Shown here one piece after another: positions 19,443 to 38,181 of a stretch of 64,000 nt of DNA (the first letter of the stretch is position 1; the number at the start of each line of letters is the position of its first letter). The position numbers and the translations under genes were made by a program. The notes below the pieces were generated by a model. That model ran no database searches and had not been told where the DNA came from. It saw nothing but the letters and a program-made list of their open reading frames with translations. The stretch covers positions 124,001 to 188,000 of IMG/VR virus record IMGVR_UViG_3300024252_000004. One strand, written 5' to 3'.

Positions 19443-19501
19443 TTTTCTCCCCGGCAGGTTGCCAGCCTGCCGGGGAGCGGGGAGAAAAACATTTCAAATG
19501 C

Positions 19502-19538
19502 TGGCACGGGTTTTGCAGAGAATGCAACAACTGTGCCA
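19502..19538. promoter_or_regulatory. Convergent twin sigma54 site palindrome
   Basis: TGGCACGGGTTTTGCA-gagaa-TGCAACAACTGTGCCA. Confidence 0.85.
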
Positions 19539-19639
19539 ACGTGTGAGCGTGTGCCTTTTTTCTCCCTGGGGCTGGGGTGAAAAAGAAAACAACTAAGTAA
19601 CTCACAGGATGTTATATCAAGACACCGGAGGTTCTTCCA

Positions 19640-19936
19640 ATGTTTCTGATCCAGATGCCCAGCGCCGCGCTTCCCGGGCGCATGTGCTACTACGATGGCC
19701 CGGCCGAGAACCCGCAGGTCGCGCCGGTGGAGCCCATGAGACGGGCAACCATGCGGGGGACGGGGTTCGATGATGTTTGGCTCGCGTTGGAGGTCCTTGA
19801 GGACTTTCAGTTCGACGCGAAGCACGCGCCGGCCACGCTGAACATGCTCGGAGGGTACGACTACACCGAGCGGCTCATGAAGGGCTGCATCGTGCTGGCC
19901 TCCGAGGTCGAAGGAGTCGAGGTGACCCAGGGCTGA
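19640..19936 (+). CDS. Hypothetical protein
   Basis: GGAGG RBS directly after a promoter copy. Confidence 0.8.
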   Translation: MFLIQMPSAALPGRMCYYDGPAENPQVAPVEPMRRATMRGTGFDDVWLALEVLEDFQFDAKHAPATLNMLGGYDYTERLMKGCIVLASEVEGVEVTQG

Positions 19937-19942
19937 GCCGGG

Positions 19943-20037
19943 CCCTTTCGGGCCCTCAAGAAAACACCGCTGACCGCCGCCTGTGTCGGCATTCGTTCCT
20001 CCAAGGTCAGCGGTGTTTTCTTGAGGGCCCGAAAGGG
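19943..20037. repeat. Perfect 33-bp inverted repeat with a 29-nt loop
   Basis: CCCTTTCGGGCCCTCAAGAAAACACCGCTGACC (19943-19975) is the exact reverse complement of 20005-20037. Confidence 0.95.
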
Positions 20038-20067
20038 GAGAAAAGATTTTCATTCTTGATAAGGAAC

Positions 20068-20104
20068 TGGCACGGACTTTGCAGTGTATGCAAGGGGCAT
20101 GCCA
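20068..20104. promoter_or_regulatory. Convergent twin sigma54 site palindrome
   Basis: TGGCACGGACTTTGCA-gtgta-TGCAAGGGGCATGCCA, enclosed by the 13-bp IR GGGAGAAAAGATT (20036-20048 / 20107-20119). Confidence 0.85.
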
Positions 20105-20172
20105 TCAATCTTTTCTCCCTGTTGTGAGGGGGTGAAAAGAAAGACACCTAAGTAACTCGTAAGATGTTATAG

Positions 20173-20550
20173 AGGGGTGCCGCGACGGCACTGAGCATGA
20201 CAGCGAGTCGGCGCCGACGACTTCGGCGAACCGACAACGACGAAACTAATAGCGAGAGGCTGAAGTTGACTCACAGACGTGTTCATCGCTGCCCACCGTC
20301 CGGGGCATAAACGGACGGCGGCGAGTAGTCGCTTGCGTGGATACCTTGGGGCCGGCAGTCCTGGGGCAAACTAAACGTAACGATGAAGCACCGGGTGTGA
20401 GGGAACGTGAAGACAGGACTCTGCCGGGTCTGGTCATGACACCTAAAACCCTCCTTTGTGACTCTGAGCATTAACCGGGCGACGGCTCGGTTCTGAGAAA
20501 GCAAAGAACGATTCCCCGTTGGGCAGCAAATGCTGTTGCCCAGCGGGACC
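20173..20550 (+). ncRNA. Putative ~380-nt structured non-coding RNA
   Basis: Follows the promoter copy at 20165; no plus-strand ORF; multiple stems (CCGTCCG/CGGACGG, CCGGCAGTCCTG/CAGGACTCTGCCGG, AACCGGGC/GCTCGGTT) and a 3' hairpin. Confidence 0.6.
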
Positions 20551-20584
20551 TCCGGGGAGAAAAACATTTCAAGCCTCGAAAGGT

Positions 20585-20621
20585 TGGCACGGTTATTGCA
20601 TACACTGCAAATGCCATGCCA
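20585..20621. promoter_or_regulatory. Convergent twin sigma54 site palindrome
   Basis: TGGCACGGTTATTGCA-tacac-TGCAAATGCCATGCCA. Confidence 0.85.
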
Positions 20622-20739
20622 GTTTATATGTTCTTTTTCTCCCCTGGCTGAGAATCTGGGGTGAAAAAGAAAACAACTAAGTAACTCACAGGGTGTTATA
20701 GAAGGACGTGAGAGAAACACCCAAACGGAGCATCCCACC

Positions 20740-21192
20740 ATGTCCGACAAGTTCACCCCCCTCTTCGCCGATGCCGCGCCCAAGCGGCAGACCTTCACCG
20801 AGAAGGTGATGAGCAAGGCGCCCGTGTCCTTCGGCACGGACGACCTCGGGAACCCGGTCGTCGGGGTCGGGATCCCCGGCTACGGTGGCTGCGGGGCGGG
20901 GGGGGCCATGCTGCTGCGGCCGGAGAACATGCAGAACTTCTGCACGGCCATCCGCAACGCCGTCGATGGTGTGGGTCCCGACCCGCTCCAGGTCGCCGTG
21001 GAGACTATGACTCGCACGGGAGAGGGGGAGATCAGCTTCAAGCTGAGCCACATGCCCCGGTCCCAGACGATCACGATGTCGTCCGCCGAGGCCATCGAGT
21101 TCGCAACGCTCGTGGAGCGGATGATCACCGCCTGCGAGAAGAAGGCGCAGGGTCCCGAGACGGACGGCGAGGAGGCGACCGACGGGGAGTGA
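20740..21192 (+). CDS. Hypothetical protein, possible PUR/PC4-like nucleic-acid-binding fold with acidic tail
   Basis: Two beta-rich+helix units and an E/D tail; architecture parallels 32276-32863. Confidence 0.6.
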   Translation: MSDKFTPLFADAAPKRQTFTEKVMSKAPVSFGTDDLGNPVVGVGIPGYGGCGAGGAMLLRPENMQNFCTAIRNAVDGVGPDPLQVAVETMTRTGEGEISFKLSHMPRSQTITMSSAEAIEFATLVERMITACEKKAQGPETDGEEATDGE

Positions 21193-21264
21193 TCTCCGCC
21201 CCGCCCCGGGAGGCTTCGGCCCCCGGGTTCCGGGGAGAAAAGATTTTCATTTTTGATAAGGAAC

Positions 21265-21300
21265 TGGCACAGATATTGCATGTATGCAAGAGTCATTCCA
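21265..21300. promoter_or_regulatory. Convergent twin sigma54 site palindrome (right half degenerate)
   Basis: TGGCACAGATATTGCA-tgta-TGCAAGAGTCATTCCA inside the 14-bp IR GGGGAGAAAAGATT (21232-21245 / 21303-21316). Confidence 0.75.
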
Positions 21301-21417
21301 TCAATCTTTTCTCCCCTGTGTGTGTATGGGGGTGAAAAAGAAAACAACTAAGTAACTTATAAGATGTTATAGAGAGGTGCCCGACAGACCGTGGCACCCA
21401 AACTCTGGAGAAATCGC

Positions 21418-21954
21418 ATGTCCTTCACGCCTCCGCACTCGCACTCCCGCTCCGTCGCTGGCCTCGGACGGCTTCTCGTCGCCGTCATGATCTCCGGCGA
21501 CAAGGCGCTCATCGCCCTCAAGTCGGCGGAGCAGGCTGTGGATGGGGCGCGGACGCGCCTGACCGTGTGGTTCCCCAACGATGAGCAGTGGCCGACCGAC
21601 GCCGAGGACAATCGCGAGGTGATCAGCGCCTTGTCCGTCGCCAACGGGGAGGTGAAGCACGCCCGGCTGATGCTGGACGGCGTCAAGGTCTCGCGGGCCG
21701 CCGGCCTCGACTTCCTGACGAGCCTGCACGAGGAGGTCGCGGCCTGCTCTGACCGCCTGTTCGTCAACCCCTACACCGGGAAGGGCGGAAAGACCTACAT
21801 GGCGTTCTTCGGCGAGGGCGACGACATCGAGCACCGGGGCCAGACCCACCGCGAGTTGCGGGACACCCTCCGCGCGAAGATCAAGAAGGCGGGCCTGGAT
21901 CCGGTGAAGGTCCAGGCGGACCACGGCTACGGCCGAGGGCGTGGCCGGCGCTGA
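21418..21954 (+). CDS. Hypothetical protein
   Basis: GGAG RBS before ATG 21418; strong GC3 codon bias. Confidence 0.8.
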   Translation: MSFTPPHSHSRSVAGLGRLLVAVMISGDKALIALKSAEQAVDGARTRLTVWFPNDEQWPTDAEDNREVISALSVANGEVKHARLMLDGVKVSRAAGLDFLTSLHEEVAACSDRLFVNPYTGKGGKTYMAFFGEGDDIEHRGQTHRELRDTLRAKIKKAGLDPVKVQADHGYGRGRGRR

Positions 21955-22127
21955 GCCGCACCCTGACGGGAGCTTCGGCTCCCCGAAGGGGGAGAAAAAC
22001 ATTGCAGAAGCATATGTGTATGCTTTTTCTCCCCTGTGCGTGTGTGTCGGGGTGAAAAGAAAAACAACTAAGTAACTCATAGGATGTTATTACAAGGTGT
22101 AAGGAACCCAAAAGCGGAGCATTGAAC

Positions 22128-22310
22128 ATGGACACGCCGACCATCATCATCGTGGATCTCTACGGGAAGGACGGGCGACCCGTCCGCACGGGAATCACGT
22201 TCCACAGCAACGACGAGGCGACCGCGAAGGAACAGGCTTCCGAGTTCGCGACACACCACAAGTCGCGGGGGAAGACCGTAAAGGCCCGGCGTCCGAAGAA
22301 GAAGCGTTGA
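22128..22310 (+). CDS. Small basic hypothetical protein
   Basis: GGAG RBS, KKKR C-terminus. Confidence 0.75.
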   Translation: MDTPTIIIVDLYGKDGRPVRTGITFHSNDEATAKEQASEFATHHKSRGKTVKARRPKKKR

Positions 22311-22315
22311 CGCAT

Positions 22316-22406
22316 GTGGGGCCGGGCAGGCGGACGCGGGTTCGATTCCCGCATCAGCCGGTCGCAAGCGATAGCTTGCCGGAGGGTTCGATTCCCTCCC
22401 CCCCAC
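22316..22406 (+). ncRNA. tRNA-like element with two T-arms
   Basis: GCGGG-TTCGATT-CCCGC (22336-22352) and GAGGG-TTCGATT-CCCTC (22382-22398); closing GTGGGG/CCCCAC; internal helix 22322-22331 / 22374-22382; no anticodon arm. Confidence 0.65.
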
Positions 22407-22531
22407 GGGGAGAAAAACATAACACCTTATCAAGATATGAGACTTTTCTCCCCTGCGTGTGCGTGTCGGGGTGAAAAACAATTCAACTAAGTAACTCATA
22501 GGATGTTATTCTAAAGTGTAGGAGGTTCCCG

Positions 22532-22834
22532 ATGCGAGTGCAGAACGACGACGGCATGTTCGAGTTTCAGACGGATTGCCGTCGCTGGCTGTGTATCCAG
22601 ACGACCCGGAAGGGACGGCGGGAGTTTGCTCCCCGTGTCCTCGTGCCGTATGCGTACGCCGGGAGTCTCTCTGCTCAGGCTCGCGCCGAGGGTGCGACCA
22701 GCGCGGACTTCGGAATCGTGGAGCCCAAGGTCAAGAAGCCGCGTGCGCCCAAGGCTCCGCGCAAGCCTCGTCAGCCTCGCAAGGTGAAGGCTCGGATGCC
22801 GGAGGGTTTCGTGCCCCTGGATCTGGGGCTCTGA
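22532..22834 (+). CDS. Hypothetical protein with Lys/Pro/Arg-rich (histone H1-like) tail
   Basis: GGAGG RBS; KVKKPRAPKAPRKPRQPRKVK. Confidence 0.75.
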   Translation: MRVQNDDGMFEFQTDCRRWLCIQTTRKGRREFAPRVLVPYAYAGSLSAQARAEGATSADFGIVEPKVKKPRAPKAPRKPRQPRKVKARMPEGFVPLDLGL

Positions 22835-22906
22835 ACGGCAAAAGGTCCCGATCACCAAGTGATCGGGACCTCCGGGGAGAAAACTTTTGCGTTTATCTTG
22901 ATGAGG

Positions 22907-22943
22907 TGGTATGAATCTTGCAGAGAATGCAAGGGTTGTGCCA
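22907..22943. promoter_or_regulatory. Convergent twin sigma54 site palindrome
   Basis: TGGTATGAATCTTGCA-gagaa-TGCAAGGGTTGTGCCA. Confidence 0.8.
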
Positions 22944-23020
22944 CCCAGGGGAGAAAAGATTCATATGTATATGCTGGGGTGAAAACCTTAGCACACAGGA
23001 AACTGGTAGGGTGTTATAGA

Positions 23021-23710
23021 AGGGTGCCGGAAAGACCCGGCAAACAGATGGATAAGGAGAATCGATAGAGTCTGCGAGAAGTGCGTGTCTCTCTTCTAAA
23101 CGCAACGCTTTGTAGCTCGTAATACCTCAGTCACCACGCAGGCGAATGCGTACCGGTGGTGACAGTTTGCCAGTCCGACGTGAAGAACAGCAGTGGTGGA
23201 TACCGGGAAGGGAAGCGGCAGCACCGTGAATAGCCGACCCGGAAACGCGAAATCGATAGTACAGACTCCCAGTAACGTGATACGCGCCCTTCGGGGAAAG
23301 CTTAACCAGTCTGTCTCGTAAGTGCATGATACCAAAGTGCAGTCCTTTAAGGGATGTAGCAGGCAACCGGAGCCGAGAACACCGAAAGGCAAATCCGGGA
23401 CTGAGGAAATGAGGTCGAAAAAGGATCGAAAGTCTGCGATCACCACCGCCATGGCGGGGTCAATCCAGGCGACGGAATCTAAGCTACTCGGTTAAGCAAC
23501 CTGAGACTAAAGACTTCCGGCGGGACTCTGCCGACATAGATAACTATAGAGGATGGACACGGAAAAGATGGGCTGCCCGGTGCAGACCAAGATGTCCATA
23601 ACATTTGCGCGAAGAGGTAGCTCCTACGAAGGCAAATCCTGTAAAGTTACCGCCCCCCACTCACGCGCCTTTGGCCGGTCATGAGTGGGGGGCGGCTCCT
23701 TTTGTTTTCC
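23021..23710 (+). ncRNA. Putative ~690-nt large structured non-coding RNA
   Basis: Runs from the promoter copy (23012) to a terminator (23650-23710); no credible ORF; long-range helices CCTCAGTC 23125 / GACTGAGG 23399 and GTAGCT 23112 / AGCTAC 23482; UUCG/GAAA tetraloops. Confidence 0.7.
23650..23710 (+). terminator. Intrinsic terminator
   Basis: 14-bp stem CCGCCCCCCACTCA / TGAGTGGGGGGCGG followed by CTCCTTTTGTTTT. Confidence 0.75.
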
Positions 23711-23822
23711 CCGTATGTCAAGCTTTTCTCCCCTGCGTGTGCGTGTCGGGGTGAAAAACAATTCAACTAAGTAACTCATAGGGTGTTATATCAAAGTATA
23801 ACAAAACCAAAGAGCAATCAAG

Positions 23823-24452
23823 ATGACTATCGCCGGTGATAGCCGCGACACGCGGAACCCTCAGAAGTCCTGGGTCGCTTGGACGGCGTCTCTCTGGGCT
23901 CAGAAGATCCTGCGGGCCGAAGTAAATCGTCCCGAGGTAGTGTCTCTCACGGGGGACTATGTCCAGGCGCACATGGAGGAGCTTTTGCCCTTCCATCGTC
24001 GGCATTTCTTCGAGATGGATCCTGTCCAGCTTCGCAAGATGCGGCGGAAGTTCAAGCGGCTCCCTCGCACGTTCACACGGGACGAGATCAGCGACACGAC
24101 CATCCATCAGGGGAACATCTTCAAGACCGACGTAGTTTCGGATGCCGATGGGGCGTATTACGACTGGGACATCACCGGCTCGATTCGTGAGGCCATCAAG
24201 TATGGTCTTGAAGATGCTGTGTGGGACGCTTTTGAGTCTCCGGGGACTCGGTGCATGGCTCTGACGGTTTCCCGTCGGATGCCGGGTGGCAAAGCGAAAA
24301 CGTCGGAGCTTTGGCGGGAGATCGTCAATGGGATCGGCGGAGTGTTCGGAGACTCTCGTGTGTGGGAGTTCGAAGAGCCGATCCACTACGGCCGGGCACG
24401 CCTTGGCTGCGGCAACATGATGCTCATCCGTGCGGTCATCCGCGAGCGGTGA
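23823..24452 (+). CDS. Hypothetical protein (possible class I methyltransferase-like fold)
   Basis: VVSLTG..., FFEMD, IHQGNIF and YYDWD fall at strand ends as in a Rossmann fold; weak call. Confidence 0.55.
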   Translation: MTIAGDSRDTRNPQKSWVAWTASLWAQKILRAEVNRPEVVSLTGDYVQAHMEELLPFHRRHFFEMDPVQLRKMRRKFKRLPRTFTRDEISDTTIHQGNIFKTDVVSDADGAYYDWDITGSIREAIKYGLEDAVWDAFESPGTRCMALTVSRRMPGGKAKTSELWREIVNGIGGVFGDSRVWEFEEPIHYGRARLGCGNMMLIRAVIRER

Positions 24453-24482
24453 AAAGAGCAATAGAAGATGTAAGGGGGCAAA

Positions 24483-24608
24483 GTGGAAATCGTCATCGTC
24501 TGGTACTCTGCGAACGAACGCGAAGACACTCCCGTGGAGGGGTTCTACCGATGGGATGATTCCCATTGTGGCGACAGCCTTTCCTTCGTCGGGACGGAGC
24601 TTCCATGA
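24483..24608 (+). CDS. Small hypothetical protein (41 aa, not in ORF track)
   Basis: AAGGGGG RBS, GTG start, ATGA overlap with the next gene. Confidence 0.55.
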   Translation: MEIVIVWYSANEREDTPVEGFYRWDDSHCGDSLSFVGTELP

Positions 24609-24919
24609 AAAGTCACGAAAAGTCTGATAGCAAACGCTGGGTGATTCAGCGCTGCGTTCGCTGCGGGCATTGGTGGGACCCGCATGGAATCTGGACAACC
24701 GACTGTCCGGCTCCGACCGAAGCTGCGCAGAGTCTGATGGCAGATCTGCGTGTGCTTGGCATCCGAAGCTCCGCCAAGCAGAATGTGGTGTTCGCATGGC
24801 GTACGAGGCGGGTGAATCCGTGGAATCGTAGGGAGTTCGATGCTCGGCACCAAACGGCCGAGGAAATCGAGAAAGAACTGCGAACCCATCCCACACGTCA
24901 GTCCCTTTACCGGGGCTGA
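24605..24919 (+). CDS. Hypothetical protein with CxxC
   Basis: RCVRCGH motif; translationally coupled start. Confidence 0.65.
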   Translation: MKSHEKSDSKRWVIQRCVRCGHWWDPHGIWTTDCPAPTEAAQSLMADLRVLGIRSSAKQNVVFAWRTRRVNPWNRREFDARHQTAEEIEKELRTHPTRQSLYRG

Positions 24920-25047
24920 GGTCGGGGAGAAAAGATTGTTATTCTTGTGAAGGTATTCTCCCCGATGCCTAAGCCGGGGTGAAAAACAATTCAACTAAGT
25001 AACTCACAAGATGTTATATCAAAGCGTAACAAAGGGATGAAGAAAGA

Positions 25048-25389
25048 ATGGGAACGGACCTGAACAAACTCCTTTCGGAGTGTGACGTTGAAACCTACGC
25101 TGCTTCGCGCGGTTCGGGTGGACAGAACGTCAACAAACGGGATACGGCGGTGCGTCTGACGCATCGTCCCACCGGAATCAAAGCCGGTTCCCGTTCCCAT
25201 TCCACGCAGGGACGGAATAAGAGCGAAGCGCTCAAACGTCTGGCAAAGAAGATCGCTCAGGCAAACGAGGTCAAGGCGGAGCGGTTGCCCACGGGAATCC
25301 CGCAGTCCGTCAAGGAAAAACGATTGTCTGATAAGCGTCGGACTTCTGCACGAAAGACCGGACGGAAGCCCGTCCGATCGGAGGACTGA
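25048..25389 (+). CDS. ArfB/PrfH-like GGQ peptidyl-tRNA hydrolase (stalled-ribosome rescue)
   Basis: SRGSGGQNVNKRDTAVRLTH.PTGI...Q.RNK..AL..L plus basic tail KRL.DKRR.S.RK..R. Confidence 0.88.
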   Translation: MGTDLNKLLSECDVETYAASRGSGGQNVNKRDTAVRLTHRPTGIKAGSRSHSTQGRNKSEALKRLAKKIAQANEVKAERLPTGIPQSVKEKRLSDKRRTSARKTGRKPVRSED

Positions 25390-25391
25390 TC

Positions 25392-25601
25392 ATGGGCAAG
25401 AAAGAACCCCTGATTGAGACGGCGGAATGCTGGTGCGGTAAAACTGTAACGTGTTCGTCAGAGGATTTCGGAAAGCCTGACGTGGTAGTCCCCGGATGGG
25501 TTTCTTGGAAGCCTATCAAGAAAGAATGTTCGTGCGGAGAGTCTCTGATCTTCGGAATGGACTTCGACAAGTTTCTGAACCTCTTTGAGGTGGAGTACTG
25601 A
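25392..25601 (+). CDS. Small Cys-rich (zinc-finger-like) protein
   Basis: ECWCG...ECSCG; GAGGA RBS. Confidence 0.7.
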   Translation: MGKKEPLIETAECWCGKTVTCSSEDFGKPDVVVPGWVSWKPIKKECSCGESLIFGMDFDKFLNLFEVEY

Positions 25602-26170: not shown

Positions 26171-26327
26171 GCCTACGCCGAGCCTCCAATCAAGGAGGCT
26201 CGGTCGGGGAGAAAAGATAATCATTCTTGTGAAGGTATTCTCCCCGAAGCACAGATAGGGGGTGAAAAACAATTCAACTAAGTAACTCATAAGATGTTAT
26301 AGAGAGGCACAGAATCGGGAGCAGAGA

Positions 26328-27370: not shown

Positions 27371-27459
27371 AGGACGGGGAGAAAAGATTGGAGGGTGAAA
27401 AAGAAAACACACAGGAAACTTATAAGATGTTATATGAGGTTGTATTCTCCGGAGACAAT

Positions 27460-27771: not shown

Positions 27772-27902
27772 GCCTCTCCCGCTCCGGCTGCGGCCGGAGA
27801 TTGGGGAGAAAAGATAAGCATCCTTGTCAAGGAGTGAAAACCTTAACCCCCAAGAAACTCATAAGATGTTATAGAATGACACCAAAAGATATCGAGGAAA
27901 CC

Positions 27903-28646: not shown

Positions 28647-28749
28647 TATAGCCTTTTGCCTATGCCCACCGGGGAGAAAAACTATTCATGTAAGTAACTC
28701 ATAGGGTGTTATATCAGGCCGTGAGAGCAACCTACCCGGAGAGTGCAGC

Positions 28750-30145: not shown

Positions 30146-30304
30146 GGTCTACGAGGTGGGGGAATAGTCCCCTCCCTCCGGGGAGAAAACTATTACAAAT
30201 TAAGCAATGTTTTTCTCCCCGAGCCAGGAGCGGGGTGAAAAGAAATACACACAAGTAACTCATAGGATGTTATAGAGAGGCGCCTCCAATCATAGAGAGT
30301 CTCA

Positions 30305-30596: not shown

Positions 30597-30714
30597 GGAG
30601 TCAGGGCTTCGGCCCTCCCTCAGGGGAGAAAAAGATTGCATTATCGATAAGGGGTGAAAACCTTAACACACAGGAAACTCATAAGACGTTATAGAGTGAC
30701 ACATGGAGAGGGTA

Positions 30715-31869: not shown

Positions 31870-31941
31870 CGCCCTCCCTCCGGGGAGAAAAAGATTGCAT
31901 TGCCAAAGCGGGGAGAAAAGATTTATTCTTGTCAGGAATGT

Positions 31942-31978
31942 TGGCACGATCCTTGCATACACTGCAAGAGCTATGCCG
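31942..31978. promoter_or_regulatory. Convergent twin sigma54 site palindrome
   Basis: TGGCACGATCCTTGCA-tacac-TGCAAGAGCTATGCCG. Confidence 0.8.
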
Positions 31979-32085
31979 GAAGTTTTTCACCCCGGGGAGA
32001 AAAGATTGTCATGGGGTGAAAAAGATGACAATGCCCCACCGGGGAGAAAAGATTAGTACACAGGAAACTCATAGGGTGTTATAGA

Positions 32086-32162: not shown

Positions 32163-32275
32163 AAGTTTTCTAAACAACTCATGATGTGTTATCATAGAGC
32201 GTCTGAAACGACCCAACCCGAGAGCTTGACTCTCAACACCCCGAGAGCTTGTCTCTCAAAGCCAAGGAAATCCCC

Positions 32276-32863
32276 ATGTCCAACACCGACTTCGAAGCCC
32301 TCGACGGTCTTGACCTCTCCGACAACAAGACGCTCAGCAGCATCGACATTCTCGGCGCGAACTTCACCGCCGGTCGCAAGGATGGGCAGCTCTGCGTCGT
32401 CTTCAAGACCAACGGCGGCAAGGGCTCCGGTCCCCAGACCGTTCGCGCGACCGAGCTCATCGAGTTCCGCGACACCCTGCACGAGTGTGTCGCCCGAGGG
32501 GAGGGGAGCACGGTCGAGGCCGGTTACATCCCCGCGCCGATCCTGCTCGGACGCAGCTTCGCGCTCGTCGCGAATCCCGGTCCCGGTCGCAACAAGAAGA
32601 ACGAGGTGACGCCCGCGCCCTTCGGCGGACGCGACTACTACGAGTGGAACAGCAACACGGGGCAGGGCACCGCGTCCAAGGGCTCCAAGCCCGCCAAGGT
32701 TCCGGTGGACGAGATTGATGGTTTCCTGGCCCTCTTCGACAAGAACGTGGACCAGACGGTCAGCCGGTTGATCTCCCTGGGGCTCATGGCGGACGAGGAC
32801 GCGGACGAGGACGAGGACGAGGGCGACGAGGTCGATCTCGACGGCATCGGTGACGAGGACTGA
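32276..32863 (+). CDS. Putative single-stranded nucleic-acid-binding protein (PUR/PC4-like repeats, long acidic tail)
   Basis: Two beta-sheet+helix units ending ELIEFRDTL / EIDGFLALF; tail DEDADEDEDEGDEVDLDGIGDED; AAGGA RBS. Confidence 0.55.
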   Translation: MSNTDFEALDGLDLSDNKTLSSIDILGANFTAGRKDGQLCVVFKTNGGKGSGPQTVRATELIEFRDTLHECVARGEGSTVEAGYIPAPILLGRSFALVANPGPGRNKKNEVTPAPFGGRDYYEWNSNTGQGTASKGSKPAKVPVDEIDGFLALFDKNVDQTVSRLISLGLMADEDADEDEDEGDEVDLDGIGDED

Positions 32864-33169
32864 ACGGTCACAGGTTGAGGGGCTTAACCGCCCCGAAACC
32901 AAGGCTCAACCAGCCGGTTAATCCCGGCTGGTTCGAGCTTCATTGTGTTTGTAAAGTTTTTCACCCCAGATGCGGGTGAGCACATGCAAAAGTTTTCACC
33001 CCCCGCTCGTAAGATTTTTCACCCCATACCTGCAAGCACACGCAAAAGTTTTCTCCCCGGCGGCCGGGTTGGGGTGAAAACCTTAGCACACAGGAAACTC
33101 ATAGGGTGTTATAGAGTGACGCCGGTAGAACTAACCGGTTAGCTTCCAAACCATGACCCCGAGGTCCAC

Positions 33170-33616
33170 ATGTCCCAGATGTCCAGTGCTCTCCTGCTTC
33201 TCGCCGCCAGCACGCTCCCCTCCGACACCGATGCCGCTTCCCTCCGGCTGATGCCCGCCGCCCTCCGCGATGCCGTCGAGGCCAAGCAGGCCGACGCCAA
33301 GGGGCAGGCCCTGGACGACGCGGCCGAGTCGGTGATGGCCCTGATCTCGAAGATGACCGACTACAAGCGCGGCACCCTCGTCGAGATCCGCCAGTACCGC
33401 CAGTACATCGCCCAGGAGAAGGGCCGGCTGGATGAGATCGATCGTGCCTTCGCGTACGGCAACGCGACCAGCAACTACATGCCCCTCATGATCGCGCTCG
33501 GAATGTCCACCGCGACCAGCGGCATGATGACCAGCGCGGACCGGGAGCGGCTGTCGGTCATCCCCGATGGTTGGACCCCGCCCGCCGATGTCCCGGCCGC
33601 GCCGACTGCCGGCTGA
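33170..33616 (+). CDS. Helical/coiled-coil hypothetical protein
   Basis: GAGG RBS, GC3-rich. Confidence 0.8.
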   Translation: MSQMSSALLLLAASTLPSDTDAASLRLMPAALRDAVEAKQADAKGQALDDAAESVMALISKMTDYKRGTLVEIRQYRQYIAQEKGRLDEIDRAFAYGNATSNYMPLMIALGMSTATSGMMTSADRERLSVIPDGWTPPADVPAAPTAG

Positions 33617-33619
33617 GAA

Positions 33620-34040
33620 TCTGACGAATGGGGGCCGGGCCAGTCCCGGTCCCCTGAGTCACACACGTCCGAACATGAATGCTAGGGACAGTGCGCGTGA
33701 AGGCCGCGCCCAGCCGAAAGGTTGCTCCGCTTTAAATTATGTTCGGCAGATCTGAGCAGAAACGGTGAAAAGGCATACTTGTTGCCTAAATGGTTTCGAG
33801 GAAGCCGCATAAGTATCCGTGGACGCAAGGAAGAGCCAAAACCTCGCTTCGGTATAGACAGTACACTAAAGACACTCGAACACATAAAGCTTATTAATCT
33901 TGTTTCTAGATTATTTGAGCACGCTATCGAGTTAGCCTGCCGGGAAGGGGGCTGCGTCTAATCACTCTTCGGAGTGGTTCTCGAAAGAGTAAGTGGGACT
34001 GGTATCGGGGCAAACCCACCGGGTGTAAATCCGGTGGGCG
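33620..34040 (+). ncRNA. Putative ~420-nt structured non-coding RNA
   Basis: Dense hairpins (GGGGCCGGG/CCCGGTCCCC, CCGAACAT/ATGTTCGG, CACTC-TTCG-GAGTG, CTC-GAAA-GAG, CCCACCGG/CCGGTGGG); the only ORF is a TTG-start 79-codon frame lacking the local codon bias. Confidence 0.5.
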
Positions 34041-34145
34041 ATGGGGGAGAAAAGATATACATCCTTGTCAAGGAGTGAAAACTATAACATAGGTCTTTTC
34101 TAAACTTCTTGTAGGGTGTTATAGAATGTTGCCAAACAACGGGGA

Positions 34146-34688
34146 ATGCAGATGCCTTTGACTGCGAAACAGGAAGCGCGAGTGGACATGCTCCTCCCGT
34201 ATTTCGATGAGGAATCCTTGGCAGCTTTCGCTGAGGAAGAGAACAGCCGGAACAACCCCGAAGACATCGTGGAACGAATCCTCACGGAGGTCACGGTCTA
34301 CGAAAAGGCAGGCGTCCGCAATCAGTACACGGGAACATACCGTGGTCATCCATTCATCATCGGAGAGGAAAACCGATACGTTGATGATGGGTTCACCCTT
34401 CGTGAAATGTATATCCGAACGCAGTACGGTGCAGGACGTGCGAGCAAGAAGATGATGGTCTTCATGATCTCCGGAAAGGTCGGAGGATATCCGACCGATG
34501 GACTGCGGTTCACAGACGAATTCAAGGGTCCGCTTGCGGACGTTCTCCAGTGTCTCTTCGAAGCTGCAAAGACGCGGTACAGAGATGCTGAGATTGAGCG
34601 TCTGATGAAGGCAGACACGAACACACCCACCCCAAAGGATGATGGAGATTTCGGACTCGATTCTCTCATCGTCACTCCACCCAACTGA
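34146..34688 (+). CDS. Hypothetical protein
   Basis: GGGG RBS after a promoter copy, 180 aa. Confidence 0.8.
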   Translation: MQMPLTAKQEARVDMLLPYFDEESLAAFAEEENSRNNPEDIVERILTEVTVYEKAGVRNQYTGTYRGHPFIIGEENRYVDDGFTLREMYIRTQYGAGRASKKMMVFMISGKVGGYPTDGLRFTDEFKGPLADVLQCLFEAAKTRYRDAEIERLMKADTNTPTPKDDGDFGLDSLIVTPPN

Positions 34689-34715
34689 GGCGAAAGCCTG
34701 CGAAGTGAGGTCAGC

Positions 34716-34922
34716 ATGAACACAACTCTCGAAACCCCGTATCTCGGTCGCTCCGATGGTGGCAAGTTCGGATGGCGGAAGCCCAGCCGTCGCACCGAGG
34801 CTGCCGAGCGACAGACCGCACGCGATGCCCGAAGCACCGCCGAGCAGATCGCCGAACTCGATGCCCGTCTGGGTGTCGGCATCGGAGCGACGAAGGAGCG
34901 CGCACGTCTCTCCGCAGAGTAG
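34716..34922 (+). CDS. Small hypothetical protein
   Basis: GAGG RBS. Confidence 0.7.
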   Translation: MNTTLETPYLGRSDGGKFGWRKPSRRTEAAERQTARDARSTAEQIAELDARLGVGIGATKERARLSAE

Positions 34923-35040
34923 AGAAACCCTGTGTCCCCTGGTTTTCCAGGGGACACTCGGGGAGAAAAGATTTGCAGCCCCCAAGGGGAGAAAACTATA
35001 ACATTAGTCTTTTCTAAACTTCTTGTAGGGTGTTATATTA

Positions 35041-35300
35041 AAGTGTCCCCAGAGAGCAGGATACAACGGAAGTTACGCAAGCAAACACTGCGATGATTGC
35101 AAGCATACCAAATAATGTAAGCCGTCTGAGCAGGCAGGAACCTGCAAGGTAAGCATTAGGCAATGAGCGGGATATACCATTGAGACATGGAAGCTGATTG
35201 AGCGGGAAGGAACCTGCGAAGCGAGTGTCATAGGGAGCGCTGATTAGGCGCTGTGTTGACGGCGAGGGTTAAGCCACTTAGGGGCCAGTCAACTTTAAAC
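35041..35300 (+). ncRNA. Putative structured RNA / long pre-tRNA leader
   Basis: Follows the promoter copy at 35031; no ORF; internal repeat GAGC(A/G)GG(C/A)AGGAACCTGC; stems GTGTCC/GGATAC, AGCGC/GCGCT, GTTGAC/GTCAAC. Confidence 0.5.
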
Positions 35301-35305
35301 GTAGA

Positions 35306-35382
35306 GCCGCCTTAGCTCAGTTGGATAGAGCGTCGGCTTTCTAAGCCGGGGGTCGCTGGTTCGAGTCCAGCAGGCGGTACCA
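35306..35382 (+). tRNA. trnR: tRNA-Arg (anticodon UCU) with encoded CCA
   Basis: Acceptor GCCGCCT/AGGCGGT, D-arm GCTC-AGTTGGATA-GAGC, anticodon loop TTTCTAA, T-arm GCTGG-TTCGAGT-CCAGC, ACCA end; 77 nt. Confidence 0.97.
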
Positions 35383-35384
35383 CT

Positions 35385-36170
35385 TCACACACTCTCGGAG
35401 GCGGCAATACGCAGGGCTCAACCAACACACGTTTCGGCGTGGTATATACGGCCCGGGTTTACGAATAAGACTGTTGGGAATAGTAGACCAGATGCAGGGG
35501 AAGATCCTGTCCGAGACACACATCCACGGACAAGCTCAGCCGTGGACGAAAAGATGGGCGATTAGAGCATATGATTCTTAAGAGGGGCTGGTGCCCATGT
35601 CGAAAGACGAAACCAGTGCAACCCTCCATGCCCCGGATTTGCTGCGGGGTAGGATGTAGCAGGGGAGGATAGACGGTAAGACAGCATTACCTTCACGTCC
35701 CTGACATCCGCCAAGACAACCCAATCCTTGCGTAAGACACGCGCGCTTAGATAGCCAATAGGTTCAGACATGTTTTGATTAGTGGGCGACTAGCCCGCCA
35801 CTCAGTTAACGAGTGGGAATCTTAAGTGACTAACGATTGAGTTAAGTTGACAGAGTTGAGTTGAATAAAAATTGCGTTCATTGTGTCTTGATTGTAGCAC
35901 ATGCAGTTGAGACTGTCCGAAACGATAACCATAAAGGTGGACATAGACGAGGGCCCGTCGAGCCCTATGTGTAACGACATGGCGACCAGCATTAGATGCG
36001 GTCGTAACGTTTGGGTCGGATTACTTCTTGGTAAGGTGTTGGTCTAAGCGCAACGTAAATGCTTTCGAAGGGCACGCACACCCGTTCTTTGATTGCATAA
36101 GGCGTAAGGATAGTAATGGTAGCCGCCGCACACCCAAACATAACACCATCCACAGTACCAAAAATGGGGG
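35385..36170 (+). ncRNA. Putative large (~790 nt, possibly two) structured RNA downstream of the tRNA
   Basis: No credible plus-strand ORF before ATG 36175; many hairpins (CACGT-TTCG-GCGTG, CCACGG/CCGTGG, GTC-GAAA-GAC, CCACTC/GAGTGG, ACATAG/CTATGT, GTTTGGGT/ACCCAAAC). Confidence 0.6.
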
Positions 36171-36174
36171 AGTC

Positions 36175-36420
36175 ATGAGAAGTAGAGATGTCGTGAAAGC
36201 CTGGGATAATGGAGTCCCAGCAGAAACAAAGAACCTGCGTACTGACGGTTTCGATCTGTGGTCTTACGAAGTGCTGATTGGTACTCGCCCAAACGCAAGC
36301 GCACAAATCGTCTTCGACTACACAGCTCCGGCTGGACATTTCGAATCACACACAACTTCGGTTCATGTGGGACTCGCGAAAAGAATCACGAACGCAAACG
36401 TGATTGAGCCTCCGGAATAA
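36175..36420 (+). CDS. Hypothetical phage protein
   Basis: GGGGGAG RBS; VVKAW...NLRTDG..LWSY..LIG pattern recalled from phage proteins (unverified). Confidence 0.75.
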   Translation: MRSRDVVKAWDNGVPAETKNLRTDGFDLWSYEVLIGTRPNASAQIVFDYTAPAGHFESHTTSVHVGLAKRITNANVIEPPE

Positions 36421-36422
36421 AG

Positions 36423-36530
36423 AGTAACCCCGAACACTCACAAGAATACTGGACATGCATCATGTTCAGCCTTCTTCTCTCTACAGGGTGTTTTATCCCG
36501 TGTTCTTTTGAGTGCTCGGGGTGTACTCCA
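36423..36530 (+). other. Long imperfect hairpin / structured leader
   Basis: GAGTAACCCCGAACACTCACAAGAATAC pairs with GTGTTCTTTTGAGTGCTCGGGGTGTACTC (about 28 bp) around an inner TGGACATG/CATGTTCA hairpin. Confidence 0.6.
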
Positions 36531-36664
36531 CATATACGCGTCCGCTACAAAGCGGAGTAACTCACCAATACCATTCGGGAGAGTATCAGGTTGTAGGACG
36601 ATCTGATTCATCTTGGCGCGTAGTGATAGTCCTTTCATATACACGAAACGGTAGGGAGCAGGCA

Positions 36665-37294
36665 ATGGCGACGAAGGAAAATTTCCAGAATCTCAAGCCT
36701 GACGTGATCGCAAAGACTCGCCTGTACTCTGACAACTCCCAGAGCTTCACAGTGCTCCATGGTGTCACCATGGAAGCGGCGCGTTATCACCTGAGTGTCA
36801 ATGAGAAGCTTGGTGGTAAGCCAGCACGGTCAATGCTCTTCAGGAAAATCTGCGACTTCACCTGTTTCGATGACAACCTCGGACGTGCGTACATGCCGCA
36901 ACCGTGGGCAAAGGGAATCCTTCCCATCTTCCCAAAGAAGTGGATGGTGAGCTTCGCCAATGGTTCGAAAATCGATCTGAGCTACACGGTTAGGCCGGGA
37001 AGCAAAAGGCAGATCGTTGGATATTCCTACGCTCTCGTACGACAAATAACCACTGGTGGGATCGGCATCTCCAAATTGACCAAGATTCTTTTGGAGGTTG
37101 GTTACTCGGGCCTCACCGTAGGTGACGTGATGGCAGCCGTAAAGTCCAGACCAGATCTGTTCGCGCCGCATAAGGGGCTTTCACAGTGGACCGTCAAGAG
37201 GGCTTATGACGCTGAGCCTATCTTGGAGGGTGATGCGGTGGCACAAACCAACAAGACGCTTCTGAAGGTCTTCAGACTCCTGCGTGACAAGTGA
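36665..37294 (+). CDS. Hypothetical protein
   Basis: GGGAG RBS before ATG 36665. Confidence 0.75.
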   Translation: MATKENFQNLKPDVIAKTRLYSDNSQSFTVLHGVTMEAARYHLSVNEKLGGKPARSMLFRKICDFTCFDDNLGRAYMPQPWAKGILPIFPKKWMVSFANGSKIDLSYTVRPGSKRQIVGYSYALVRQITTGGIGISKLTKILLEVGYSGLTVGDVMAAVKSRPDLFAPHKGLSQWTVKRAYDAEPILEGDAVAQTNKTLLKVFRLLRDK

Positions 37295-37536
37295 GTCCTC
37301 CGGTCTGGATCAATCTGCTTCCGCACGGATTCTATAAGCTCACAAGCTACAAGGGAATTGGATGGATGGGATTCCATTACCATGACTGTGGTGTGGAGTT
37401 TATCGAACGGTTCCAGGTGAAGTCATATTCGTTCTACTTTTGGGGAATGACTGACTGGCCCACCACGATGATTGGTCTGCTTGGAAGCGGGGAACTGATC
37501 AAGGTTGAACGCCACGAGATAAGGGGAGAGGTTTAG
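37291..37536 (+). CDS. Hypothetical protein
   Basis: GTGA coupling. Confidence 0.65.
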   Translation: MSPPVWINLLPHGFYKLTSYKGIGWMGFHYHDCGVEFIERFQVKSYSFYFWGMTDWPTTMIGLLGSGELIKVERHEIRGEV

Positions 37537-37826
37537 CCTCGTCCCCTCCGGGGAGAAAAGATTTACATCCTTATCAAACGAACATAGACCACCCTTCCCG
37601 GCATGGCTGTTCGAATATGTACACGCCGCATTCAGTTTCAGAAGATGCCAATTGAATGACTTGGTTTGGCCCGGATAATTTACCCAGTAAACGATAGTTT
37701 TTTCTTTGTAATTAACTACCGCACTTATCTACCTCTTCTATTCTCGACGGTGTGTTGAAGGTTCTCCCGAAGGTCTACCTAACAGTTAGTAAGTGAAAAA
37801 GTCCCTTACAGGGCTCTTCCATAACC

Positions 37827-37851
37827 CTATAACCCCCTACCAGTTATTTAG
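37827..37851 (-). promoter_or_regulatory. Reverse-oriented copy of the cassette promoter
   Basis: Minus strand reads CTAAATAACTGGTAGGGGGTTATAG; compare AACTGGTAGGGTGTTATAG at 23001. Confidence 0.6.
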
Positions 37852-38181
37852 AAAAGAACAATGTATCACCACAACACACCATCATCTAACCCTGCCCCCA
37901 CCGGGGAGAAAAGTTTTGCACGGCACCACCCACCACCGGGGTGAAAACTTTAACATCAGGTTTAACATGTCTATCTATCATCATTCAAGACTCAAACATA
38001 CCAGCACATACCACTCAACTCCTTAGGGTACATACTATGGCATTCAATCCAGAGAGCAAATCGAACTATCCTTTACTGATAAGAATGTGATAAGCATCGC
38101 TCTATTCTAATTTTCTCATAGGACGTTATCAGTAGTTGAACTGTACCGGATCAATCAGACCCAACTGTCAGGAGTTTAACA

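What the first reader, a model, noticed from the sequence alone, without database searches (positions are those of the whole stretch)
19443..37947. More than 50 GGGG(A/T)GAAAA boxes in direct and inverted orientation: an unknown high-copy protein-binding site
Seen: the decamer is confined to spacers. It often forms 13-14-bp inverted repeats bracketing the twin sigma54 element (20036/20119, 21232/21316), and a GGGGTGAAAA copy sits 10-20 nt upstream of most promoters. Inference: it could be the site for a phage activator/repressor, a bEBP enhancer for the sigma54 sites, a recombination core, or a parS/centromere-like loading zone. A ParB-N-only gene (19212-19442) lies immediately before the first box, but it lacks an HTH.
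Basis: partly seen in the sequence, partly recalled or inferred. Interest (0 to 1): 0.68.

Follow-up and report, generated by a model that had tools for sequence, protein, structure and literature searches.

The report
Conserved purine box of jumbo-phage promoters
The repeated decamer GGGG(A/T)GAAAA is a real, strongly conserved control signal that sits at a fixed distance upstream of a special class of promoters in a GC-rich island of small unknown genes in an uncultured 395-kb marine phage and its relatives. Its likeliest reader is a phage protein whose predicted fold resembles purine-strand-binding PUR proteins.

Summary
There are 52 exact boxes in 19443-37947 (53 in the window, 0.4 expected by chance), and this stretch holds 52 of the 64 in the 395-kb phage genome. 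All 52 lie in the 37% of the stretch that is non-coding.

The box is not a parS site or a sigma54 enhancer. It belongs to repeated terminator-promoter cassettes. Their layout is hairpin, box1 (+), variable centre, box2 (-), box3 (+), a linker of exactly 15 nt, then a shared promoter core ending in TGTTATAG.

Genome-wide, promoter cores fall into two exclusive classes. 34 carry TTTTCTAAA and no box. 17, all in the island, carry the box and no TTTTCTAAA.

Relatives found through one island protein keep the decamer letter for letter. In five phage lineages the register is also kept: 43 of 55 boxes are at 37 nt, 7 at 46 nt, and none is one base off. The linkers (35 different sequences) and the neighbouring genes have diverged.

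That protein (32276-32863) is the best conserved island protein compared. In every lineage with flanking DNA its gene is bracketed by box arrays. Its model most resembles Pur-alpha, a binder of purine-rich strands.

Best reading: an upstream activator site for a second promoter class, with the PUR-like protein as candidate binder (inferred). The cassette architecture resembles the PeSL cassettes of T4-type phages.

The parts
19443..37947 (.). Span holding 52 exact GGGGWGAAAA boxes (40 on +, 12 on -), all intergenic, inside the only GC-rich island of the genome
21206..21226 (+). Example cassette: GC-rich hairpin after gene 20740-21192, without a U-tract. Box1 follows 0-7 nt after such hairpins in nearly all spacers
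21232..21241 (+). Example cassette: box1, GGGGAGAAAA. The A variant is used in 23 of 25 + strand boxes outside the promoter register
21265..21300 (.). Example cassette: optional centre, a palindrome of two facing sigma54-consensus sites. Present in 7 spacers
21307..21316 (-). Example cassette: box2, the inverted copy, 21-24 nt before box3 in 7 cassettes
21329..21373 (+). Box-type (class II) promoter: box3 GGGGTGAAAA, 15-nt linker, core ending in TGTTATAGA
19574..19618 (+). Class II promoter (box, 15 nt, core)
20129..20173 (+). Class II promoter driving the ORF-less RNA 20176-20550
20658..20702 (+). Class II promoter
22049..22093 (+). Class II promoter
22468..22512 (+). Class II promoter
22976..23020 (+). 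Class II promoter driving the ORF-less RNA 23022-23706
23748..23792 (+). Class II promoter
24976..25020 (+). Class II promoter
26259..26303 (+). Class II promoter
27392..27436 (+). Class II promoter (box AGGGTGAAAA, 1 mismatch)
27831..27875 (+). Class II promoter (box GGAGTGAAAA, 1 mismatch)
28671..28715 (+). Class II promoter (A variant of the box)
30232..30276 (+). Class II promoter
30651..30695 (+). Class II promoter
32041..32085 (+). Class II promoter (A variant), last box of the six-box array
33071..33115 (+). Class II promoter, after four inverted boxes
31882..32050 (.). Densest array: 6 boxes upstream of the PUR-like gene
32276..32863 (+). Candidate box-binding protein (195 aa): two beta-beta-beta-beta-alpha repeats, acidic tail, best structural match Pur-alpha repeat I-II. 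It is the best conserved island protein compared
32958..33080 (.). Array of 4 inverted boxes plus 1 forward box downstream of the PUR-like gene. Inverted boxes follow this gene in every related lineage with DNA
17859..17893 (+). First promoter of the island, of the box-less TTTTCTAAA-like class. It drives 17893-19442, which ends just before the first box

Best explanation
The decamer is a cis-acting DNA signal of repeated terminator-promoter cassettes. These cassettes punctuate an island of small orphan genes and non-coding RNAs at the start of the phage's long rightward block of + strand genes.

One copy, usually the T variant, stands in a rigid register. Its first base is 37 nt before the GTTAT of the promoter core. 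That is about -51 to -42 if TATAGN is taken as the -10 hexamer. This copy defines a second promoter class: it keeps the extended -10-like core TGTTATAG but lacks the TTTTCTAAA element that all other promoters of the genome carry in the -35 region. One to five further copies, direct or inverted, fill the space back to the upstream gene's hairpin.

I infer that a dedicated sequence-specific protein binds the boxes and helps the host RNA polymerase start at these promoters. That would give the island its own expression programme.

The best candidate binder is the island protein at 32276-32863. Its predicted fold is PUR/PC4-like, and such proteins hold the purine-rich strand and open the duplex locally. 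Its own gene is wrapped in the densest box arrays, which suggests autoregulation.

Shown: enrichment, spacer restriction, rigid register, class exclusivity, conservation in relatives, and RNA downstream of two such promoters.

Inferred: protein binding, activation rather than repression, and the identity of the binder (about 0.35 on its own).
For: Enrichment and spacer restriction.

Two promoter classes: of about 51 promoter cores, 34 have TTTTCTAAA and no box, 17 have the box and no TTTTCTAAA, and 0 have both (Fisher P 1.6e-8).

Conservation within class II promoters:
- box: 1.76 bits per position, 95% pairwise identity
- core: 1.49 bits, 88% identity
- linker: 0.98 bits, 58% identity
- upstream flank: 0.14 bits, 29% identity

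Relatives (L041, L044, L045, L043, L046, L049, L052) keep the same decamer and layout. The shared island proteins compared with L041 and L044 have diverged to 28-82% identity, and 19 of 32 island genes have no counterpart in L041.

Register in five lineages: 37 nt in 43 of 55 promoter-linked boxes, 46 nt in 7, never 36 or 38, with 35 different linker sequences.

Boxes hold their place in aligned orthologous spacers.

In L043 the core ends in TGTTATAAT, a textbook extended -10. No phage RNA polymerase genes were detected.

Metatranscriptome contigs cover only the two ORF-less stretches that begin about 20 nt after box-type promoters.

Candidate binder:
- Models have pLDDT 73.7 and 84.6.
- Foldseek's first 11-12 rows are all Pur-alpha repeat I-II, probability up to 0.98.
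- VIA-align's top hit is 3k44, Z 7.0-7.2, rmsd 3.5 over 114-115 residues; Borrelia Pur-alpha is also listed.
- The DUF3276 family appears among the Atlas rows.
- Box clusters next to the gene are larger than elsewhere: mean 3.7 against 2.4, P 2.5e-5, though the lineages are not independent.
- A distant homologue (L051) is flanked by a variant repeat, GGGAATAAAA.
- Pur-alpha binds GGN-rich single strands and unwinds duplex DNA (PMC4764581).
Against: No binding or transcription experiment exists.

The start sites are inferred from assembled RNA contigs, which cannot show true 5' ends.

The PUR match is by predicted fold only:
- Z of about 7 is the level that unrelated models often reach (notes).
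- TM is 0.3-0.4.
- No Pfam or PDB sequence match was found.

An acidic tail is also typical of general single-strand-binding proteins of replication, so the protein may have nothing to do with the boxes.

In L041 and L044 the arrays beside the gene are no larger than elsewhere.

The T variant breaks the all-purine run.

The role of box1 directly after the hairpins is not explained by promoter activation alone.

The two registers, 9 nt apart, also fit the two subsites of a classical UP element.
Confidence: 0.55

Rival explanations
1. The box is a UP-element-like contact read directly by the alpha C-terminal domains of the host RNA polymerase. No dedicated factor is involved.
For: If TATAGN is the -10 hexamer, the A-run of the box falls at -46 to -42, the proximal UP subsite. 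The only other register seen is 9 nt further upstream, near the distal subsite. In many promoters the box runs into more A-rich sequence. The UP subsite positions come from established E. coli work, not from a test here.
Against: The four Gs are as invariant as the As. They stay so in a relative with 40% GC (L043) and in distant relatives with other promoter cores. Most copies are inverted or lie 16-104 nt further upstream. Copies cluster in arrays of 4-6. UP elements are A+T-rich and loosely conserved.
Confidence: 0.15
2. The boxes act in RNA. Box1 and box2 pair into a hairpin in read-through transcripts and serve termination, processing or stability. Box2/box3 pairing is an alternative structure.
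For: Box1 and box2 are perfect complements in six spacers. Two degenerate box2 copies differ by a change that keeps a G-U pair. Box1 follows the gene-end hairpin by 0-7 nt. PUR-type proteins bind RNA as well as DNA (PMC4764581).
Against: The best conserved copy, box3, lies upstream of the inferred start site in a fixed register to the promoter. Arrays of 4 inverted boxes or 5 direct boxes have no pairing partners. Direct pairs at 28 nt recur with unrelated intervening sequence. No U-tract follows the box1:box2 hairpin. No compensatory A/T change was seen.
Confidence: 0.1
3. The boxes are mainly recombination or mobility sequences: crossover points for cassette shuffling as in PeSLs, or ends of a miniature transposable element.
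For: Spacers form paralogous subfamilies of 73-94% identity next to unrelated genes. Segments left and right of box3 occur in different combinations. 19 of 32 island genes are replaced between conserved anchors in L041. Two elements have 13-14-bp terminal inverted repeats.
Against: A crossover role does not need a rigid 37-nt register to the promoter, or exclusivity with TTTTCTAAA. No integrase or resolvase was found. No target-site duplications are visible at the inverted-repeat ends. A 10-bp identity is short for homologous exchange. Shuffling is better seen as a consequence of repeated regulatory cassettes.
Confidence: 0.08
4. The boxes are enhancer sites for an activator of the twin sigma54-type promoters.
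For: In 6 of 7 spacers with the twin element, box1 starts 31-33 nt before the forward TGGCAC. 17 of the 19 sigma54-consensus sites of the genome lie in the island. The twin element travels with the boxes in relatives.
Against: Only 7 of about 17 box-bearing spacers have the element. All 17 box-type promoters have a box whether or not the element is present. The phage has no sigma54 gene and no AAA+ activator gene. 20-30 bp is far closer than known enhancer distances (established knowledge).
Confidence: 0.05
5. The boxes form a parS-like loading zone for the ParB-N protein of 19212-19442.
For: The gene ends one base before the first box and has a ParB N-terminal fold.
Against: The protein is 76 aa, with no helix-turn-helix or other DNA-binding part. 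The boxes are asymmetric, dispersed over 18.5 kb and locked to promoters. The boxes occur in relatives' loci in which no such neighbour was seen, although those loci were not searched for the gene.
Confidence: 0.02

Closest known systems
PeSL cassettes (promoter-early stem-loops) of T4-type phages (PMC2839356, PMC4122927)
   Same: About 50 copies per genome of a small composite intergenic cassette made of a GC-rich stem-loop and an early promoter. They concentrate in a plastic region, mostly upstream of orphan genes. Gene content between related phages differs by cassette-bounded replacements.
   Different: The promoter here is not a sigma70 -35/-10 consensus. The cassettes carry a dedicated 10-bp box in 1-6 copies in both orientations, with one copy in rigid register. 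An optional sigma54-like palindrome is present. The island is GC-rich rather than AT-rich upstream of the promoter. No mini-circles or exchange events were shown here.
T4 middle promoters (MotA box with sigma appropriation; established knowledge)
   Same: A second promoter class keeps the -10-type element, lacks the usual -35-region element, and has a phage-specific box instead. This would give a distinct temporal class.
   Different: The MotA box is centred near -30; this box is centred near -46. No MotA or AsiA homologue was detected, although the search had no positive control. Extra copies and inverted copies have no counterpart in T4.
UP element of bacterial promoters (established knowledge)
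   Same: It lies between about -40 and -60, contains an A-run, and has a fixed register with a second register about one helical turn upstream.
   Different: An invariant G4 half, strict 10-bp conservation across phages of different GC content, inverted and distal copies, and arrays.
PUR element and Pur-alpha / PC4-like proteins (PMC4764581, PMC7549692)
   Same: A purine-rich G-containing element near promoters, and a protein with a beta-beta-beta-beta-alpha double repeat. Pur-alpha is proposed to hold the purine strand and displace the other strand to activate transcription.
   Different: The similarity of the protein is by predicted fold only. No binding was shown. Pur-alpha is eukaryotic, with bacterial single-repeat relatives. 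No PUR-type regulator of phage promoters is known to me.
Correia-type miniature inverted-repeat elements of Neisseria (established knowledge)
   Same: Short intergenic elements with terminal inverted repeats that carry promoter parts and form hairpins in transcripts.
   Different: No target-site duplication was seen and no integrase or resolvase was found (DDE-type transposases were not searched for). Arms are usually only the 10-bp box. Single and direct copies are common.

Membership tests
PeSL-type regulatory cassette | Repeated intergenic unit combining a stable stem-loop with an early promoter | tested here: met
   Hairpins of -13 to -34 kcal/mol lie 0-7 nt before box1, followed by a promoter core within about 30-130 nt.
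PeSL-type regulatory cassette | Promoter matches the host sigma70 -35/-10 consensus | tested here: not met
   The core ends in TGTTATAGN with no TTGACA-like hexamer. Only the relative L043 has the full TGTTATAAT.
PeSL-type regulatory cassette | Concentrated in plastic regions upstream of orphan genes | tested here: met
   52 of 64 boxes lie in an 18.5-kb island. Of the roughly 30 island proteins scanned, only two got a family match (RF-1, ParB-like) in Pfam or PHROGs.
PeSL-type regulatory cassette | Recombination between cassettes explains indels between close relatives | tested here: inconclusive
   13 of 32 genes are colinear with L041 and the rest are replaced between box-bearing spacers. 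Breakpoints were not mapped, and the relatives are too diverged (65-76% DNA identity).
UP element | Located at -40 to -60 in fixed register | tested here: met
   Registers of 37 nt and 46 nt only. Positions assume that TATAGN is the -10 hexamer.
UP element | A+T-rich, degenerate sequence | tested here: not met
   The G4 half is invariant; the box carries 1.76 bits per position.
T4 MotA-type middle promoter | The -10 element is kept and the -35 element is replaced by an activator box | tested here: met
   Exclusive classes: 34 with TTTTCTAAA, 17 with the box, 0 with both.
T4 MotA-type middle promoter | Box centred at about -30; MotA and AsiA present | tested here: not met
   The box centre is about -46. 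No PF09158 or PF09010 match was found; the controls did not ring, so absence is not proven.
PUR / PC4-like nucleic-acid-binding domain (protein 32276-32863) | [quoted passage not shown] | tested here: inconclusive
   The model's topology fits. Pur-alpha ranks first in Foldseek (probability 0.97-0.98) and VIA-align (Z 7.0-7.2), but TM is 0.3-0.4 and Z is below 8.
PUR / PC4-like nucleic-acid-binding domain (protein 32276-32863) | Sequence membership (Pfam PurA, DUF3276, Whirly) | tested here: not met
   No Pfam hit for any of the 9 close or 10 distant members, and no PDB sequence hit.
PUR / PC4-like nucleic-acid-binding domain (protein 32276-32863) | Binds purine-rich single strands | not testable with these tools
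   Needs EMSA, anisotropy or SELEX.
sigma54 enhancer (bEBP site) | Activator of the AAA+ sigma54-interaction family, and sites 80-150 bp upstream of a -24/-12 promoter | tested here: not met
   No PF00158 or PF04552 match in the phage. Boxes lie 20-33 bp from the sites, and most boxes have no such site nearby.
parS / ParB centromere | ParB with a DNA-binding domain and clustered palindromic sites | tested here: not met
   The 76-aa protein has only the ParB-N fold. The sites are asymmetric and dispersed.
Integron attC / site-specific cassette array | Tyrosine or serine recombinase next to the array | tested here: not met
   No PF00589 or PF00239 match in the genome; the controls rang.
Miniature inverted-repeat transposable element | Terminal inverted repeats with target-site duplication | tested here: not met
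   Arms of 13-14 bp occur in two copies only. No duplication is visible at their ends.

The most novel reading that the evidence does not exclude
A clade of uncultured large phages runs a separate transcription programme through a PUR/PC4-like protein. This protein would recognise the purine strand of a 10-bp box repeated about 50 times. It would open or shape the DNA at a fixed distance upstream of extended -10 promoters, in place of a -35 contact, and it would autoregulate through arrays around its own gene. That would be the first PUR-element system in a virus of bacteria, and a new way for a phage to redirect the host polymerase.
Probability: 0.3. Interest if true: 0.8.

Novelty: new variant of a known kind. 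Interest (0 to 1): 0.62.

Why it matters
Uncultured jumbo phages are known almost only as gene lists, and their regulatory code is largely unread. Here sequence alone yields:
- a promoter core and two promoter classes
- a strictly conserved upstream box with a measurable geometric rule (15-nt linker, no tolerance)
- a candidate protein with a fold not previously tied to phage transcription

This makes the system directly testable in vitro without the unknown host, using synthetic promoters, purified protein and heterologous polymerase. It also gives a search key for related phages and their early regions, namely the box plus the protein family of 68 clusters.

The cassettes also mark where orphan genes and abundant non-coding RNAs are swapped in and out. 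This extends the PeSL idea beyond T4-type phages.

Tried and rejected
DNA pattern scans for box-promoter and three-box patterns in IMG/VR and JGI metagenomes returned only the same phage at 100% identity, plus one chance hit, L031. Protein-based locus searches with a flanking protein and the first island protein gave no near relatives. blastn against GenBank phages found nothing. tblastn with three members of the PUR-like family also found nothing there.

A literature search for the decamer gave only unrelated primers.

The 'joints' and loose ends in DNA run X17 are cross-mapping of paralogous cassettes at the 90% threshold, not rearrangements.

Helical phasing of box spacings showed no single period. 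Only two spacings are preferred: 21-24 nt for inverted pairs and 28 nt for direct pairs.

Pfam and PHROGs on about 30 island proteins gave only RF-1 and ParB-like.

The whole genome was searched without a match for T7-type polymerase, beta and beta', sigma54, bEBP, integrase, resolvase, MotA and AsiA. The T7-type, MotA and AsiA searches had no positive control.

The paralogy I suspected between 32276-32863 and 20740-21192 was not supported.

The whole record behind L041 could not be searched. Two look-ups gave contigs too short to judge (L048, L053), and one gave no DNA.

Other readings considered from the sequence and dropped:
- Fur-box and IHF-like sites after box1: each is seen in one or a few copies only.
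- RegB-type GGAG cleavage: the T variant lacks GGAG.
- Lambda boxB-like hairpin: the pairing does not fit.

Complex prediction was not used, because it cannot take DNA.

Full report
SETTING. The window is bases 124,001-188,000 of a 395,127-bp virus record rated complete. The same phage is present at about 100% identity in many seawater metagenomes. The stretch from about 18 to 36 kb of the window is the only GC-rich island of the genome, at 53-62% against about 43% elsewhere. It begins just after the point where leftward genes end (17074) and a long block of + strand genes begins (17893). It holds about 35 short genes. Of the roughly 30 scanned, only two got a family match: an RF-1/GGQ domain protein and a ParB-N-like protein. 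It also holds long ORF-less stretches.

THE OBSERVATION. GGGGWGAAAA occurs 53 times in the window against 0.4 expected. It occurs 64 times in the genome, 52 of them in 19443-37947. It is the commonest 10-mer of the island and far commoner than any promoter word. All 52 copies fall in the 37% of the span that is non-coding (P about 6e-23), and every spacer above 85 nt has at least one.

ANATOMY. Spacers are built from a small set of blocks:
- a GC-rich hairpin without a U-tract
- box1 on the + strand, almost always the A variant, 0-7 nt later
- a variable centre, which in seven spacers is a palindrome of two facing sigma54-consensus sites
- box2, inverted
- 11-14 nt, often alternating TG/CG
- box3 on the + strand, usually the T variant
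- 15 nt of variable sequence
- a conserved core AACTCAYAGGRTGTTATAG

Variant use is partitioned. The T variant fills 13 of 15 exact promoter-register boxes. The A variant fills 23 of 25 other + strand boxes. Every box-type promoter has at least one more box 16-104 nt upstream. Inverted-then-direct pairs prefer 21-24 nt, and direct pairs prefer 28 nt with unrelated sequence between them.

TWO PROMOTER CLASSES. The same core occurs about 50 times in the genome, nearly always on the + strand between window 17.8 kb and 229 kb. 34 cores are preceded directly by TTTTCTAAA (at most 2 mismatches) and have no box in register. 17 cores, all in the island, have the box (at most 1 mismatch) ending 15 nt before the core and no TTTTCTAAA (at least 4 mismatches). 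None has both (Fisher P 1.6e-8). Within the box class, the box is the most conserved segment: 1.76 bits per position, against 1.49 for the core, 0.98 for the linker and 0.14 for the upstream flank. A few box-less-class promoters inside and outside the island have a box further upstream, most of them exactly 9 nt further.

WHICH POLYMERASE. No T7-type polymerase, beta/beta', sigma54 or sigma54 activator was detected. One sigma70-family gene lies far away, at 361 kb. In the relative L043 the core ends in TGTTATAAT, the textbook extended -10. So the core is most simply a sigma70-family extended -10 region, the box lies at about -51 to -42, and TTTTCTAAA lies in the -35 region. These positions are an inference.

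EXPRESSION. In two seawater metatranscriptomes, contigs cover only 20195-20478 and 23038-23614 of the 6 kb that was laid. These are the two ORF-less stretches that start about 20 nt after box-type promoters. Both fold better than shuffles (z -3.9 and -2.0) and match no Rfam family. Contigs cannot prove start sites, but the placement fits promoter activity.

RELATIVES. DNA patterns found only the same phage. The island protein at 32276-32863, however, has homologues at 47-78% identity and a wider family of 68 clusters. Their contigs show the same system:
- L041, part of a 405,912-bp scaffold, has 35 exact boxes in 20.6 kb.
- L044 has 25 in 11.1 kb.
- L045 has 10 in 5.4 kb.
- L043 has 9 exact boxes plus GGAG variants at 40% GC.
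- L046 has 12 box-type copies in 2.3 kb (11 exact plus one GGAG variant).
- L049, whose protein is only a distant homologue (E 8e-19), has 14 box-type copies in 4 kb (13 exact plus one GGAG variant), although its promoter core differs.

Across the five lineages that share the core, the box starts 37 nt before GTTAT in 43 of 55 cases and 46 nt before in 7. It is never at 36 or 38, and there are 35 different linkers. Orthologous spacers of three phages, at 65-76% DNA identity, keep the boxes in place while the flanks diverge and some boxes are gained or lost. Only 13 of 32 island genes have a colinear homologue in L041, at 29-80% identity. The rest are replaced between box-bearing spacers. A decamer that stays identical under this much divergence, in a register that never slips, is under selection for a function tied to promoter geometry.

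A CANDIDATE READER. The 195-aa protein is the best conserved island protein compared (80-82% against L041 and L044). It has two repeats, each with a Lys-Gly-Ser loop, invariant Lys, Asn, Tyr and Trp residues, and an acidic tail. Models reach pLDDT 73.7 with 9 sequences and 84.6 with 33. They show beta-beta-beta-beta-alpha twice.

Structural matches:
- Foldseek's first 11-12 rows are all Pur-alpha repeat I-II (probability up to 0.98, E about 1e-3). Whirly, MRP1/2 and PrgE follow.
- VIA-align, which does not depend on Foldseek, also ranks Pur-alpha first (Z 7.0-7.2, rmsd 3.5 over 114-115 residues). It also lists Borrelia Pur-alpha on the second repeat.
- The Atlas gives viral orphan clusters first and DUF3276 among its rows.
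- There is no sequence-level match, and Z near 7 is within the range that unrelated models can reach.

The fold is therefore a lead, not a proof. Pur-alpha binds GGN-rich single strands of DNA or RNA and unwinds duplex without ATP. It has been proposed to activate transcription by holding the purine strand of promoters (PMC4764581). The fold class is reviewed in PMC7549692.

Link to the boxes. In every lineage with flanking DNA the gene is preceded by direct boxes and followed by inverted boxes. In this phage these are the two densest arrays, with 6 and 5 boxes. Clusters next to the gene average 3.7 boxes against 2.4 elsewhere (P 2.5e-5, lineages not independent; in L041 and L044 there is no excess). 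A distant homologue in L051 is flanked by a different purine repeat, GGGAATAAAA followed by ACCTGGC. Another in L052 is flanked by GGGGAGAAAA and GGGGATAAAA. This hints at covariation but is too thin to count as a test.

MECHANISM PROPOSED. Shown:
- a conserved box in rigid register
- exclusive use with the -35-region element
- extra copies upstream
- conservation across a phage clade
- RNA downstream of two such promoters

Inferred:
- A dedicated protein binds the boxes and assists the polymerase at promoters that lack the -35-region element. This sets the island's genes and RNAs apart as one regulon.
- The PUR-like protein is that factor, binding the purine (non-template) strand. Its own gene would be controlled through the arrays.
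- The first operon of the island (17893-19442) uses the box-less class and precedes the first box, so the two classes may fire in sequence. The order is unknown.

I prefer activation to repression, because a site upstream of the -35 region with zero spacing tolerance is what a contact with the polymerase predicts. This is not tested.

RIVALS. They are, in order of my confidence: direct recognition by the alpha subunit (UP element), an RNA hairpin role, recombination or mobility, sigma54 enhancer, and parS. The reasons are in the Rival explanations section. The cassette architecture as a whole is closest to the PeSL cassettes of T4-type phages (PMC2839356, PMC4122927). Cassette-bounded gene replacement is seen here too. 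I regard this as a consequence of the repeated regulatory units, not as the box's function.

VERDICT. The feature is real, functional and conserved. It is a new variant of known kinds: a phage promoter class defined by an upstream box, and PeSL-like regulatory cassettes. It comes with an unexpected candidate reader. 

Noticed in passing
window 20176-20550 and 23022-23706: Two ORF-less stretches directly after box-type promoters. They are the only parts of 19400-25399 covered by metatranscriptome contigs. Both fold better than shuffles (z -3.9 and -2.0) and match no Rfam family. They are probably abundant phage non-coding RNAs of about 370 and 680 nt. The 5' part of the second is conserved in L041 and L044.
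   Followed up: partly
window 17612-17850, 19502-19538, 20068-20104, 20585-20621, 21265-21300, 22907-22943, 28610-28646, 31942-31977: Perfect sigma54-type sites (TGGYAY-N5-TTGCW), mostly as facing pairs 5 nt apart. 17 of the genome's 19 sites lie here. They are conserved in relatives (L041, L044, L045, L046, L052), yet the phage has no sigma54 or activator gene. They could be host-sigma54 promoters or a palindromic operator. Unresolved.
   Followed up: partly
window 18000-36000: The only GC-rich island of the genome (53-62% against 43%), with third-codon-position GC up to 0.93. Relatives show the same contrast (L041: 0.58 falling to 0.41). The cause is unknown. One idea is early genes tuned to a GC-rich host's codon use.
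   Followed up: partly
window 22309-22353: A tRNA-like piece (acceptor and T-arm, matching the ends of the tmRNA model, E 3e-8 but below the gathering score) directly after the small gene 22122-22310.
   Followed up: no
window 22454-22467, 23734-23747, 21317-21328: Alternating TG/CG tracts of 12-14 nt fill the gap between box2 and box3 in several cassettes. Such tracts can adopt left-handed DNA under supercoiling. In relatives this gap has other sequences.
   Followed up: no
window 25048-25389: A 113-aa protein with an RF-1/GGQ peptidyl-tRNA hydrolase domain (Pfam E 3e-18), conserved at 65-66% identity in L041 and L044. It may be a ribosome-rescue-type factor among early genes.
   Followed up: partly
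window 17893-18708 and 19212-19442: The first island operon encodes a 271-aa protein with weak restriction-endonuclease/resolvase-like leads (low-confidence model) and a 76-aa protein with a ParB N-terminal fold.
   Followed up: partly
window 33617-34040 and 35030-36500: Further long ORF-less stretches. The second follows a promoter at about 35005-35040 and contains tRNA-Arg(TCT) at 35306-35382. More non-coding RNAs are possible.
   Followed up: no
window 37829-37861 (- strand): The only minus-strand copy of the box-less promoter class. It faces an ORF-less stretch, 37560-37830, that is bounded by boxes at 37550 and 37903.
   Followed up: no
window 57513-58802, 4000-6294, 60270-61559: An adenylosuccinate-synthetase homologue that falls in the PHROG named for PurZ (E 1e-55), a bacterial-type topoisomerase I, and an RNA ligase. 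The first raises the question of whether the phage replaces adenine in its DNA, which would bear on how any protein reads the A-run of the box.
   Followed up: no
L049 1200-1330 and 2200-2260: In this distant relative the boxes precede a different repeated motif, a palindrome around AGATAAAATTTTATCT, instead of the core seen here. So the box is more widely conserved than the promoter core.
   Followed up: no
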